NCBI RefSeq assembly: GCF_006345805.1 | Contig: NC_043010.1 | Location: forward strand, 64,976,001-65,040,000 | DNA: 64,000 bases | From: Octopus sinensis | Taxonomy: Eukaryota | Reading direction: 5' to 3' | Shown here: positions 979-60,170 of the stretch, in pieces | How the letters are laid out: each line of letters begins with the position of its first letter | How positions within the stretch are numbered: the stretch's first letter is position 1 | Notes under the pieces: model-generated | Seen by the model: the letters and a program-made list of their open reading frames with translations, nothing else | Told to the model about the DNA's origin: nothing | Database searches by the model: none | Program-made: the position numbers and the translations under genes

Positions 979-1122
979 CATATGTTTGCTTGTCACACTT
1001 CTTTCCATGCCATCCATCTTCGCAGCCATATTTACAGATTCCAGTAATTTGGTGACAATATTCCGCTCCAGAACAATGACATTCATTGATACAGTCTTTA
1101 CCATACAATTGTGGTGGACATC
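979..1122 (-). CDS. Gene 2 EGF-like exon
   Basis: caatttag|...G|gtaagt, 144 nt, phase 1-1, CPPQLYGKDCINECHCSGAEYCHQITGICKYGCEDGWHGKKCDKQTY, 8 Cys. Confidence 0.92.
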
Positions 1123-3279: not shown

Positions 3280-3423
3280 CATATAACTTAATATGATAAA
3301 CTCCAGCTTTCCCATCAATATACAAATAAGAATTCTCTACGTCACCGGTACAAATTGTTCTATTTGCGTTTGGTTTTAATTTGCATTCCATATTATATGG
3401 ATAGGTAACTTTCATTGTTGAAT
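3280..3423 (-). CDS. Gene 2 non-EGF extracellular module, exon 2
   Basis: tctctatag|...G|gtatgt, 144 nt, phase 1-1, DSTMKVTYPYNMECKLKPNANRTICTGDVENSYLYIDGKAGVYHIKLY(G). Joins the EGF exon as KLYG-CPPQLYG. Confidence 0.7.
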
Positions 3424-4512
3424 CTATAGAGAACAGAATATACAATATACGTAAAAACAGAAAATTTATATCAGCAAATGTTAAGTTTAAGTAAATATAA
3501 ATAAAACAAGTGTGTGTATATGAGTGTGCGCGTGCCTCTGCGTGTGTGTGTGTATTTATTAAAGTAAATAGTTTTGCTAGAAATAAGAGTCAAATCAACT
3601 CAATAGCCACACATACGCATATATTTATATATATGCGTGGATACGTATGTATCCATATCAGTGTATATGTCACGAGATCTACTTCACAGCCCTTAACTGC
3701 TCCTTTAAAAACTGCAAATCACCATCTTCATCATCAACATCATCATCAACTGGAAATTGAGTATATATGGTATATTTAGCACCCTGTCAGCCAGATCCAT
3801 GACTATATTTCGATACTAATTTACAGTGATTTCATTTTTCTGACATTATCAATGCACTTGAGTAAGTATGACTCTTGCAGTGTCCTTTCTGCTAAATATT
3901 TTGGGCTTTTTATGTCTGCATAGAGAAAACTATTAAATACCACCGACTATTTTTCTTAGACCTGCTCTGAAATCAGCCGACATTCGTGAAATTGATAAAT
4001 ATATTGATGAGAAGAAGAGAAGAGAGAGAGAGAGAGAGAGAGCAAATGGTAAGGAAAGGTCTACCTTTGCACTGAAATACTTGCATTATTAACATTATTT
4101 TAGGTGGCGAGCTAGCATTCATTCCGGCGCTTTCCTCTTAAATTCTGCCGAGTCCGACTTCGCTTCTAATTCTTCTGGGGTCGAAAAATAAGAACCACCC
4201 TGCACTAATTCAAGTTTGGATTTTACACAAACTTGTAAGAATCTACGTATATACCACGTTGCCAATAATTTCAGAGATTCTGCTCACTTGGAATAATCGT
4301 TATAAATTTTCTAATAAGCATTAAAAAACGTGCTCAGTCAACGTGAACCAATATTTTGATACTTTCATAAAATAATATTATATTGTCATTCAATTGATAA
4401 TGTCTGAATACAGTGTATTTAAAACGAATTAATTTCGATTTATTGTCATGAAAAATATAACTACAACAATCATTATCAACAATAAAATAGAATATGAAAT
4501 ATTATTTCTCAC

Positions 4513-4662
4513 CCGCAAAATTACTGTAAATTTCTACAGTACTAAATCTGTATGTGTTTCTGAATCGCATTAGTATTCGGGGTTTCTTTGCCTGTTTGTT
4601 ATCAGAGGAAAATAAATAGGAATACGTGCTCGACTCGTTCTTTATGAATTCATGATATTTTC
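4513..4662 (-). CDS. Gene 2 non-EGF extracellular module, exon 1
   Basis: atatacag|...G|gtgaga, 150 nt, phase 1-1, open: KYHEFIKNESSTYSYLFSSDNKQAKKPRILMRFRNTYRFSTVEIYSNFA. Confidence 0.6.
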
Positions 4663-13546: not shown

Positions 13547-13698
13547 GCTTTTGACAATATGGCTTTTTAATCCAGGTAAGCATCCATTTTCACATTTACT
13601 AAGGATTTGGAACTGGCAGTCACTAAGGTGTTTACAGTTACATTGGTATTTCTGGTCTTTCCCAAACAAGCCAACATCACCATAACCTTTACAACTGT
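13547..13698 (-). pseudogene. Gene 2 N-terminal EGF-like exon with 1-bp deletion
   Basis: ttttcag|...C|gtaagt, 152 nt (153 would keep frame), SCKGYGDVGLFGKDQKYQCNCKHLSDCQFQILSKCENGCLPG. The terminal TAT TGT CAA AAG (YCQK) is one base out of frame. Confidence 0.75.
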
Positions 13699-18880: not shown

Positions 18881-19277
18881 GCAAAATATGAGAGTAAGAG
18901 CTGGATCATGCTATTCTATTAAATGATATAAAATAACACTAATACTACTAAACTTACCAGGTTTTCTGAAGCAAGTACTTTTACAATAATCAAGTTCCCT
19001 CTTATTATCTGCGACGCAATCTCCTTTGGTGATATCACATTGGGCTTTAATATAAATAAAAATAGAATTTTTATTTTTAAGAAACCATCAAGTGAGATAC
19101 CTTAGAAATCTAGTAGAATATGAAAATATCATATTCATGTCTTTCTCGGCAATAAAAATGACATAAATCAAAACATTTGTTAGTGAAAATAAAAATGAAG
19201 GGAAAGCTTTTCAGCGAAAATACAGACCGAAACTTTATTGCCGGGATCGTAATAATGTTATAATATTAAAAGGGTAA

Positions 19278-58560: not shown

Positions 58561-58859
58561 TCATAACCATTTACTTCTTTGCACTGTTACCTATTTTACG
58601 ATTTTTTATTGTTTTTTATCGTTTTTTCTGTCGAATTAAAAAAATTTATTGTATTATTTTTTATAATTTTTAAAATTTCTATTTCATTAATTTAATTTTG
58701 TTTAAATTTTAATTTTTTTACTTTTTATTCTTTACTTTTTATTTTTTATCTTATATCTGTTATTTTTGAATTTTTAAAAATTTTTTTAATTTTTTCATCT
58801 TGTAACCTTCTCCATTTTTGCCCCTTTTTTACCGACCTTCTTTATCATATTTTATTTTA

Positions 58860-60170
58860 TTTCTATATACACGCACACATACATTCACACACGTACATAT
58901 GCACACACATGCACACATATACGCACGCGCACAGGCATGAACTCACATATACCTCACATATATAACCCACACACACACCATACACATACACACAACACAC
59001 ATACATGCACACATATACACACATGCAGGTACACACACATACACACATATACACACATGCACTTACACACGCACACATGCGCATACACACACACACCCAC
59101 GGACGCATACACGAACGCAAATATAACTCCACACACACGACTCCATGCACATACTCACATATACACACACCCATACACACGCATACATAAGCACACATAC
59201 GCGCACATACACGCACGCGCACAGACATGAATACACATGCACCACACATATATATCATACACACACAACATGCACATACAAGCACACAAGCAATGTACAC
59301 ATATACACATACACACACGCACACACACACACAGGCACAGGCACACACATACAAACACACGCACATACATATACACACATCACACACACAACCCCACGTA
59401 CACACGTACACACATATACACACTCACACAGACGCTCATACAAATACATACGCACACACATACAAACACACGCACATACATATACACACACCACACACAC
59501 AACCCCACGTACACACGCACACACATATACACATGCACACACACATATACACACTCACACACACACGCACATACTAATACATACGCACCCACATACACAC
59601 ACACGCACATGAACGCACACACACCTCCCATTCACACAACACAATCATACAAACACGCTCACAATTACACATACAACGACATGCACACACGCACATACAC
59701 ACGCACACGCACACACTCATATACAGGAATGCACATATTACTCCACACACACAAAGCCACGCACATGCATATACACACGAACATACACATACGCACATAC
59801 ACATATGTACACACACGCACGCACACGCACACACACACACAAGACACACACACATCATACACACACAGCATATACATAGACACACACACAGCATATACAT
59901 AGACGCACACATACATACACATGCACACAATACTTCAAACTGCCTCCCAAACACATTTCTACTGACCATTCCTCTACGCACATGTGAAGAGACACATAAC
60001 TCCACAAAGGTCCACCACTCCTGTTACCATGCTACTGAATTTTTCCAACTTTAAGAGACAAAGTTCACTCACACATCCACATATAAACATCCAAGACCAC
60101 ACAAACTCCACACACACACGCATACACACACATACCATTACACCCACACCCACACGCAGACTAGCGCACA
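58860..60170. repeat. About 1.3 kb CA-rich cryptically simple repeat with higher-order units
   Basis: (CA)/(TACA)/(CGCA) mosaic; a unit of about 78 bp recurs near 59343 and 59455. Confidence 0.95.

What the first reader, a model, noticed from the sequence alone, without database searches (positions are those of the whole stretch)
3280..4662. Uncharacterised extracellular module of about 98 aa, split into two phase-1 exons between EGF repeats
Seen: exons 4662-4513 and 3423-3280 join in frame to each other and to the EGF exon: KYHEF...PRILMRFRNTYRFSTVEIYSNFA-DSTMKV...MECKL...ICTGDVENSYLYIDGKAGVYHIKLY-G-CPP. Alternating hydrophobic residues, one Cys pair and the ..LYG-C junction resemble a much-diverged galactose-binding-like/discoidin (F-type lectin-like) beta-sandwich, without recognisable fucolectin motifs. 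The EGF exon ends QTY(G), and G plus the module's first bases would give GKY, so the unit may repeat beyond the window edge. Inference: a candidate ligand-binding domain specific to this family.
Basis: partly seen in the sequence, partly recalled or inferred. Interest (0 to 1): 0.7.

Follow-up and report, generated by a model that had tools for sequence, protein, structure and literature searches.

The report
Orphan beta-sandwich module in octopus phosphatase receptor
The two exons are real and encode a roughly 98-residue, all-beta extracellular domain, found so far only in a tandemly duplicated octopus receptor tyrosine-phosphatase family and matching no described domain family; it is a modest curiosity rather than a surprise.

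Summary
Exons 4662-4513 and 3423-3280 (minus strand) have canonical AG/GT sites and are phase 1-1. They join in frame to each other and to the EGF exon 1122-979.

The window is Octopus vulgaris. The module sits in the ectodomain of a receptor-type tyrosine phosphatase. The order is Cys-rich exon, EGF-like exon, module, EGF, then a genuine F-type lectin domain beyond the left edge, more EGFs, a TM segment and the PTP domain.

Relatives turned up only in Octopus (O. sinensis, O. bimaculoides, O. vulgaris). Exon lengths, phases and splice sites are conserved. Between species dN/dS is 0.35 (Fisher p = 8e-4).

No Pfam or PDB sequence match exists. Two AlphaFold runs give an 8-9 strand all-beta fold (pLDDT about 64). 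Foldseek finds only weak, mixed beta-sandwich hits.

It is not excluded either, because an intron position nearly coincides. The "unit repeats beyond the edge" guess is wrong; the lectin domain follows.

The window's copy may be decaying. The upstream EGF exon carries a 1-nt deletion, and recent paralogs show dN/dS of 0.7-1.9.

The parts
18958..19044 (-). Cys-rich exon (87 nt, phase 1-1; QCDITKGDCVADNKRELDYCKSTCFRKP) of the same gene copy ('gene B'). It follows the signal-peptide exon in O. sinensis P0001.
   Evidence: tblastn of P0001/P0002; sequence read.
13547..13698 (-). EGF-like exon immediately upstream of the module. It is 152 nt instead of 153: a 1-nt deletion between 13570 and 13569 (GGAT-TAAA vs GGATATAAA in three other loci) shifts the frame before ...PYCQK. 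Its last base c plus 'ga' of the next exon gives the junction Arg.
   Evidence: two tblastn frames; DNA alignment with L002, L003, L004.
4513..4662 (-). Module exon 1 (150 nt, phase 1-1): (R)KYHEFIKNESSTYSYLFSSDNKQAKKPRILMRFRNTYRFSTVEIYSNFA.
3280..3423 (-). Module exon 2 (144 nt, phase 1-1): DSTMKVTYPYNMECKLKPNANRTICTGDVENSYLYIDGKAGVYHIKLY(G). It contains the conserved Cys pair.
979..1122 (-). EGF (MEGF/laminin-type, 8 Cys) exon downstream of the module. The next coding exon (F-type lectin exon a) lies beyond the left edge, about 10.6 kb further on in the closest relative L001.

Best explanation
The two exons encode a compact, disulfide-stapled all-beta (beta-sandwich-type) extracellular domain with no detectable relatives outside the genus Octopus.

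It is one bead in the membrane-distal tip of a tandemly duplicated family of type-I receptor protein tyrosine phosphatases. The order is signal peptide, small Cys-rich segment, EGF-like, this module, EGF, F-type lectin domain, EGFs, TM, PTP domain.

Each module exon is symmetric (phase 1-1), so the module behaves as a shuffling or skipping cassette. It is intact in some paralogs and has decayed and been skipped in at least one.

The most likely role is inferred, not shown. Together with the adjacent lectin domain it would form the ligand-recognition head of the receptor, or a rigid spacer that positions that head. Ligand engagement would then be read out through the cytoplasmic phosphatase.

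Shown: coding reality, architecture, taxonomic restriction, selective constraint between species.
Predicted: the all-beta fold.
Inferred: ligand binding.
For: **Gene structure and reading frame:**

**Architecture.** It comes from relatives P0001 (O. sinensis XP_029644740.2) and P0002/P0013 (O. vulgaris CAI9733301.1/CAI9733300.1, 'receptor-type tyrosine-protein phosphatase T-like'), together with O. bimaculoides P0006/P0016.
- Pfam on P0001, P0002, P0003 and P0006 finds F5_F8_type_C_2 after the next EGF in all four, and Y_phosphatase in P0002 and P0006. It finds nothing on the module.
- The neighbouring domain's profile hits solved F-type lectins: FBP32 at 4e-24 and eel agglutinin 1k12 at 5e-9.

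**Species.** Window exons at 38490-29755 are 94-100% identical to P0002, and the juxtamembrane exon at 40787-40692 is 81% identical, so the window is O. vulgaris.

**Conservation.**
- Module identity is 91/77/64% to the L001, L002 and L003 copies, with 56 of 98 positions invariant.
- Exon lengths and splice sites are identical.
- dN/dS vs O. bimaculoides is 0.35, like the flanking EGF exon at 0.39; p = 8e-4.

**Fold.** Two AlphaFold2 runs give 8-9 strands, no helix in the module, pLDDT 64 and pTM 0.57-0.58.

**Orphan status.**
- phmmer over 1.84e9 representatives found only four true hits, all Octopus.
- There is no Pfam hit and no PDB sequence hit.

**Cassette behaviour.**
- P0011 lacks the module. 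In its locus L004 both module exons carry several frame-breaking indels.
- P0002/P0013 skip exon 2.
Against: - **Model confidence is only moderate.** pLDDT is about 64 from a very shallow alignment, and Foldseek gives no hit better than E = 0.02. 'Beta-sandwich' is therefore a prediction, not a classification.
- **No transcript data could be examined.** Support for splicing rests on gene models and conservation.
- **Recent copies look unconstrained.** Among them dN/dS is 0.71 (window vs L001) and 1.9 (window vs L002). This fits relaxed constraint as well as diversification; the excess over 1 is not significant (p = 0.13).
- **The window's own copy may be broken.** It has a frameshift in the preceding EGF exon, and no signal-peptide exon was found between 19 and 30 kb.
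- **Taxonomic restriction may partly reflect search limits.** One single-sequence HMMER search was run, and the word-indexed searches performed poorly.
Confidence: 0.6

Rival explanations
1. The module is a degenerate, internally shortened copy of the F-type lectin domain. It would have been created when an [EGF + lectin] unit was duplicated inside the gene, and it has since lost about 45 residues, including the fucose-binding His/Arg region and the outer disulfide. This is essentially the reader's idea.
For: - The best hhalign local match pairs module 23-51 (..PRILMRFRNTYRFSTVEIYSNFAD) with lectin 61-89 (..PYWQVTFDKPYKISQLRIYTRKGN).
- Under that register the module's only intron (phase 1, after ..IYSNFA) falls one codon from the lectin domain's intron (phase 1, after ..IYTRKGN).
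- Both domains are preceded by an EGF ending C-x-K-R/Q-T/K-Y.
- By eye, the module's Cys pair would match the inner SLC...IKC pair, and the two missing Cys are partners of each other in F-type lectins. This rests on my own alignment plus textbook knowledge of 1k12 and was not tested.
- One CBM32/discoidin-type module (4zxe) appears among the weak Foldseek hits.
Against: - hhalign P = 0.09. 15% of column-shuffled modules score as well, and the reversed module scores higher (18.9 vs 14.8).
- The global hhalign alignment picks a different, meaningless register.
- There is no Pfam F5_F8_type_C hit even at E<=10.
- The lectin profile finds six solved F-type lectins, while the module profile finds none.
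- No F-type lectin is among the 50 Foldseek hits listed for either model.
- All exons in this ectodomain are phase 1, so the phase match carries no weight.
- The H-x(22-28)-R-x-D-x4-R/K motif is absent.
Confidence: 0.2
2. In this particular window the module belongs to a dying duplicate (a pseudogene, or a partial segmental duplication). The sequence would then be a fossil of a real domain rather than part of an expressed receptor.
For: - There is a 1-nt deletion in the upstream EGF exon relative to three other loci.
- No signal-peptide exon is detectable in the 11 kb upstream.
- The upstream tandem copy lacks the WPD and HCX5R exons within the window, suggesting a messy array of partial duplicates.
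- dN/dS is about 0.7-1.9 among recent copies, and exon identity to L001 (95-96%) is no higher than intron identity (92-95%).
- A sister paralog (L004) has demonstrably decayed module exons.
Against: - Both module exons, the Cys-rich exon and EGF2 are intact, with perfect splice sites.
- A single 1-nt indel may be an assembly error.
- The signal-peptide exon is short and could lie further away or be diverged.
- The rest of the gene lies outside the window and could not be inspected.
Confidence: 0.35
3. The module is a highly diverged member of another common small beta-sandwich class used in receptor phosphatase ectodomains, such as fibronectin type III/Ig-like or CUB.
For: - The C-terminal segment ..LYIDGKAGVYHIKLYG resembles an FN3 E-F 'tyrosine corner' by eye (inference only).
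- CUB-EGF (1szb) and Ig-like or hybrid-domain structures occur among the weak Foldseek hits.
- FN3 repeats are typical of receptor PTP ectodomains (established knowledge).
Against: - There is no fn3, Ig or CUB Pfam hit at E<=10.
- All Foldseek E-values are >= 0.02, and the hit lists are heterogeneous and differ between the two models.
- The Cys spacing (11 residues, across a hairpin) fits neither Ig nor CUB.
- No strand would follow the putative F strand.
Confidence: 0.1
4. The exon pair is a chance open frame or a gene-prediction artefact, not a real feature.
For: Only predicted gene models, not transcripts, were available. Some models skip one or both exons.
Against: - Lengths, phase and splice sites are conserved across three species.
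- dN/dS is 0.35 at p = 8e-4.
- There are no indels, where about 5 would be expected from the intron rate.
- 56 of 98 residues are invariant.
Confidence: 0.03

Closest known systems
F-type lectin (fucolectin / FTP; Pfam F5_F8_type_C_2, PF00754) domains, e.g. striped bass FBP32 (3cqo) and eel agglutinin (1k12)
   Same: - Extracellular, all-beta, encoded by two phase-1 exons, and preceded by an EGF ending ..K-R-T-Y.
- It sits one EGF away from a true F-type lectin domain in the same protein.
- There is a weak local resemblance around the '..V.IY.R' strand, and the intron positions nearly coincide.
   Different: - It is 98 aa rather than about 145 aa, with one rather than two or three disulfides.
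- It has no H...RxD....R/K motif.
- It matches neither profiles nor solved lectins, and the similarity does not exceed shuffled controls.
MAM domain of receptor PTP mu/kappa/T (the names given to the O. vulgaris gene models)
   Same: A beta-sandwich module at the membrane-distal end of a receptor tyrosine phosphatase ectodomain. It is a plausible functional analogue in recognition or adhesion (established knowledge for MAM; inference here).
   Different: MAM is about 170 aa with four conserved Cys. There is no MAM Pfam hit, and the octopus ectodomain is built from EGF and lectin modules, not MAM-Ig-FN3.
Draper / MEGF10-type multiple-EGF receptors (the names RefSeq gives P0001, P0006, P0011)
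   Same: The flanking exons are the same MEGF/laminin-type EGF repeats. All exons are phase 1-1.
   Different: Draper/MEGF10 have EMI/NIM domains and an ITAM/NPXY tail. They have no PTP domain and nothing resembling this module, so the RefSeq names reflect the EGF repeats only.
Small carbohydrate-binding beta-sandwiches (CBM2 xylan/chitin-binding domains 1xbd and 5dhe; ColG collagen-binding domain 1nqj)
   Same: Similar size (87-115 aa) and jelly-roll-like sandwich. They give the best TM-scores to the models (0.45-0.60).
   Different: Foldseek E-values are 0.03-0.4 and sequence identity is 7-14%. The proteins are bacterial or archaeal, so this is a shape resemblance only.

Membership tests
F-type lectin / F5_F8 type C (galactose-binding-like) | Significant match to the family profile (Pfam PF22633/PF00754) or to solved members. 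| tested here: not met
   No hit at E<=10 for any module copy. The module profile vs PDB gives 0 hits at E<=10. The neighbouring domain passes both tests.
F-type lectin / F5_F8 type C (galactose-binding-like) | Fucose-binding motif H-x(~24-26)-R-x-D-x4-R/K. | tested here: not met
   A regex search found it absent in all four full-length module copies. The family's own lectin domains also deviate from it.
F-type lectin / F5_F8 type C (galactose-binding-like) | Profile-profile similarity to the lectin domain of the same proteins. | tested here: inconclusive
   hhalign P = 0.09 over 29 columns. 15% of shuffles reach it and the reversed control scores higher. The intron position lies within one codon.
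F-type lectin / F5_F8 type C (galactose-binding-like) | Eight-stranded jelly-roll fold superposable on 1k12/3cqo. | tested here: inconclusive
   The models are all-beta with 8-9 strands, but pLDDT is only 64. No F-type lectin is in the 50 Foldseek hits listed. One CBM32 appears at E = 0.3.
EGF-like (MEGF/laminin-type) repeat | Spacing of eight Cys, C-x-x-G-x-[FY]-G-x-x-C-...-C-x-C..., in about 45 aa. | tested here: not met
   The module has only two Cys. The flanking exons 13698-13547 and 1122-979 do show the pattern.
Receptor-type protein tyrosine phosphatase (gene-level membership) | TM segment plus a cytoplasmic PTP domain (PF00102) in the same polypeptide as the module. | tested here: met
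   Met in relatives: P0002 at 1.9e-33 and P0006 at 1.5e-25, and P0016 carries VIHCSAGVGRTG. For the window's own copy the 3' part lies outside the window and could not be tested.
Fibronectin type III / Ig-like / CUB | Profile match, or the characteristic Cys/Trp/Tyr core. | tested here: not met
   No Pfam hit at E<=10. The Cys pair is 11 residues apart, and Foldseek hits to such folds have E>=0.1.

The most novel reading that the evidence does not exclude
The module is a new, cephalopod-born domain family. It could be a new fold variant, or a half-sized derivative of the F-type lectin made by internal duplication. It would serve as a rapidly diversifying recognition determinant in a tandem array of receptor phosphatases, a small-scale analogue of the lineage-specific surface-receptor expansions known in octopus. 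The high nonsynonymous divergence between paralogs (dN 0.15 vs dS 0.08) would then reflect positive selection on ligand specificity.
Probability: 0.15. Interest if true: 0.55.

Novelty: new variant of a known kind. Interest (0 to 1): 0.3.

Why it matters
If confirmed, the module would add an unannotated, lineage-restricted domain to the catalogue of metazoan extracellular modules. It would also correct the current database names ('draper', 'MEGF10', 'RPTP T-like'), which describe only the EGF or PTP parts.

The locus gives a clean example of exon-cassette birth and death. The module is intact, half-skipped or decayed in different tandem paralogs, and frame is preserved because the exons are symmetric.

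The biological payoff depends on whether these receptors have a role in octopus neural wiring or immunity, which nothing here addresses. Lineage-specific domains of unknown function are common, so the finding is solid but of moderate interest.

Tried and rejected
- **Word-indexed protein search with the 99-aa module:** no candidates.
- **The same search with a six-sequence module alignment:** 33 candidates, none significant. Both were unproductive even though close relatives exist.
- **phmmer hits P0004, P0005 and P0007:** these are bacterial or low-complexity repeat proteins, rejected as spurious on inspection.
- **Pfam GldH_lipo hit (E = 0.07-0.2, far below cut-off):** rejected.
The accepted alignment was shallower.
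- **hhalign in global mode:** gave a meaningless register.
- **Internal repeat between the two exon halves:** none.
- **Signal-peptide exon of this gene copy:** searched by blastn, tblastn and an ATG/hydrophobicity/donor scan. Nothing convincing was found.
- **Remaining PTP exons (WPD loop, HCX5R) in the window:** none found.
- **Loci for P0002 and P0003:** not on record.
- **Two literature searches for this architecture:** returned nothing relevant.

Full report
**1. What is in the sequence**

On the minus strand, 4662-4513 (150 nt) and 3423-3280 (144 nt) are bounded by good acceptors (..ttctttatatacag|..ttctgttctctatag|) and donors (|gtgaga, |gtatgt). Both start and end in phase 1. Together they read KYHEF...SNFA-D-STMKV...HIKLY and continue in frame into the EGF exon 1122-979 (G-CPPQLYGKDC...CDKQTY). 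A tblastn of the module against the window finds no second copy.

**2. Which gene it belongs to**

A full HMMER scan of 1.84e9 representative proteins found seven hits. Four are real: P0001, P0002, P0003 and P0006. The other three are repeat proteins that match by composition.

Cluster look-ups identify the four:
- P0001 is Octopus sinensis XP_029644740.2 ('protein draper').
- P0002 is Octopus vulgaris CAI9733301.1 ('receptor-type tyrosine-protein phosphatase T-like').
- P0003 and P0006 are O. bimaculoides models.

Window exons at 38490-29755 are 94-100% identical to the C-terminal half of P0002, and the juxtamembrane exon at 40787-40692 is 81% identical. The window is therefore O. vulgaris.

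The relatives give the architecture: signal peptide, a short Cys-rich segment, an EGF-like repeat, the module, an EGF repeat, an F-type lectin domain, further EGF repeats, a TM helix and a PTP domain.
- Pfam finds F5_F8_type_C_2 (2e-10) at P0001 288-379 and Y_phosphatase in P0002 and P0006. It finds nothing over the module.
- A profile of the lectin segment hits solved F-type lectins: FBP32 at 4e-24 and eel agglutinin at 5e-9.

In the window the same gene copy contributes four further elements:
- the Cys-rich exon 19044-18958;
- the EGF-like exon 13698-13547;
- the two module exons;
- EGF exon 1122-979.

The lectin domain lies beyond the left edge. The EGF exons at 63.8-52.8 kb and the juxtamembrane and PTP exons at 40.8-29.7 kb belong to the upstream tandem copy. 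The module is therefore indeed 'between EGF repeats', but not the ones 48 kb away.

The junction residue before KYHEF is Arg (c|ga), as in P0002 ('CQKRKYHEF'), not Gly.

**3. Is it a real coding module?**

I fetched the O. sinensis loci L001 (unplaced scaffold, 92-95% DNA identity to window 8937-1) and L002 (chromosome CM016872.1), and the O. bimaculoides locus L003.

The O. bimaculoides gene model starts at the Met inside exon 2. The missing exon 1, the EGF-like exon and the Cys-rich exon are nevertheless all present upstream, with canonical splice sites. In every intact copy the exons are 150 and 144 nt and in phase 1.

Evidence for constraint:
- Protein identity to the window is 91% (L001), 77% (L002) and 64% (L003). 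56 of 98 positions are invariant, including both Cys.
- Nei-Gojobori estimates for window vs O. bimaculoides give dS 0.65, dN 0.23 and omega 0.35, close to the flanking EGF exon at 0.39.
- The synonymous excess is significant (Fisher p = 8e-4).
- The flanking introns align at 72-77% with about one gap opening per 58 nt, whereas the 294 exon nucleotides have none.

A chance ORF is excluded.

**4. Recent history**

Among the recent copies omega is 0.71 (window vs L001) and 1.9 (window vs L002; dN 0.152, dS 0.080). The excess over 1 is not significant (p = 0.13).

Exon identity to L001 (95-96%) is no higher than intron identity.

In the O. sinensis locus L004 both module exons carry several frame-breaking indels, and the RefSeq model (P0011) splices EGF to EGF in frame. 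The O. vulgaris models P0002 and P0013 skip module exon 2 and also the second lectin exon, probably through annotation error.

The window's own copy has a 1-nt deletion in the upstream EGF exon relative to L002, L003 and L004. I could not find its signal-peptide exon. This copy may therefore be decaying, or the assembly may contain an error.

**5. What fold, what family?**

By sequence the module is an orphan. There is no Pfam family at E<=10 apart from a sub-threshold GldH_lipo match, and no PDB chain at E<=10.

AlphaFold2 was run on the single sequence with the EGF, and on the module alone with a six-row alignment. Both runs gave all-beta models with strands at about 29-33, 40-47, 55-57, 62-66, 72-77, 83-87 and 91-99. 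Mean pLDDT was 64 and pTM 0.57-0.58.

Foldseek against the PDB returned nothing below E = 0.02. The hit lists are mixed:
- thiamin pyrophosphokinase C-domain, ColG collagen-binding domain and viral jelly rolls;
- integrin hybrid domain, reeler domain, CBM2 and CBM32 modules.

'Small beta-sandwich, probably jelly-roll-like' is as far as this goes.

**6.

The family's own lectin domain is the most likely donor if the idea is right.

In favour:
- hhalign of the module alignment against the lectin alignment picks module 23-51 vs lectin 61-89, pairing RFRNTYRFSTVEIYSN with TFDKPYKISQLRIYTR.
- In that register the module's intron lies one codon from the lectin domain's intron, and both are phase 1.

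Against:
- The score (14.8, P = 0.09) is reached by 15% of column-shuffled modules and is beaten by the reversed module at 18.9.
- The global alignment chooses another register.
- Phase 1 is universal in this ectodomain, so the phase match carries no weight.
- The fucose-binding motif is absent.

I therefore rate this a live but unsupported hypothesis, at about 0.2.

The 'unit repeats beyond the edge' suggestion is refuted. After ..QTY/RTY every relative continues with VNIA(E/Q)GK.TNQ.., the lectin domain, and each locus has one module.

**7. Mechanism, with status of each step**

- Shown: a conserved, spliced, extracellular coding module in a receptor PTP family restricted, as far as searched, to Octopus.
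- Predicted: a compact beta-sandwich whose two Cys bridge neighbouring strands 62-66 and 72-77.
- Inferred: it forms the distal recognition head with EGF1, EGF2 and the lectin domain, or acts as a rigid spacer. The variable segments (residues 24-35, 59-61, 66-72 and 78-82) are candidates for a binding surface. Ligand engagement would modulate the cytoplasmic phosphatase, as in other receptor PTPs (established knowledge for the class, untested here).

**8. Verdict**

This is a real, correctly delimited feature. The specific fold assignment is unproven, and one guess (repetition beyond the edge) is wrong. Novelty is modest: an unannotated, lineage-restricted domain in a known kind of mosaic receptor.

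Noticed in passing
window 63795-63677, 63435-63301, 53306-53178, 52925-52791 (minus): Four MEGF-type EGF exons (phase 1-1) form two similar pairs about 10.5 kb apart. They match the C-terminal EGF run of O. sinensis P0001 and are absent from the O. vulgaris models P0002/P0013. The first one lacks its first Cys, and its 5' end abuts a (TA)n tract.
   Followed up: partly
window 40787-40692, 38490-38350, 37088-37002, 36077-36006, 33293-33186, 29910-29749 (minus): These are juxtamembrane and N-terminal PTP-domain exons of the upstream tandem copy, 81% (juxtamembrane exon) and 94-100% (PTP exons) identical to O. vulgaris CAI9733301.1. The exons for the WPD loop, the HCX5R catalytic loop and the second domain are not in the window. 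Either this copy is truncated, or the 878-aa model P0013 fuses two tandem copies.
   Followed up: partly
window 13570/13569 (minus-strand exon 13698-13547): A 1-nt deletion (GGAT-TAAA vs GGATATAAA in L002, L003 and L004) shifts the frame of the EGF-like exon just before its last Cys. It is either a real pseudogenising mutation or an assembly error.
   Followed up: yes
L004 10970-11157 and 12217-12389 (O. sinensis VCDQ01002497.1): Both module exons persist in this paralog but carry multiple frame-breaking indels. The RefSeq model ('MEGF10', P0011) skips them and stays in frame.
   Followed up: yes
window about 5590-5527 (minus); P0008 residues 1-27: The O. sinensis RefSeq model LOC115230963 starts with 'MEKISAVSHCVERFFDALYLYMHVYVG', spliced onto KYHEF. 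The equivalent window sequence lies in the intron next to a (CATA)n microsatellite. This is probably a prediction artefact on a short scaffold that lacks the true 5' exons.
   Followed up: partly
relatives P0001 250-398, P0003, P0006 (lectin domain; beyond the window's left edge): The family's F-type lectin domains deviate from the canonical fucose-binding motif. The His becomes Gln in the O. bimaculoides copies, and RxD becomes RKG or RMK. Fucose binding should therefore not be assumed.
   Followed up: partly
window 1608/1609 vs L001 12720-19844: The O. sinensis scaffold has about 7 kb that is absent from the window at this intronic point. This is an insertion/deletion polymorphism between the copies, probably a transposon.
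   Followed up: no
window 58800-60050: A long, imperfect CA/CACA-type microsatellite block shows extreme GC skew (-0.58 over 58-60 kb). Similar (CA)n, (TA)n, (CT)n and (CATA)n tracts are scattered through the introns.
   Followed up: no
window about 19500-19320, 57760-57460, 60790-60560: Three copies of a short interspersed repeat share the pseudo-ORF '..RGEAGMHGRLLVFH..'. It is likely a SINE-type element common in the introns.
   Followed up: no
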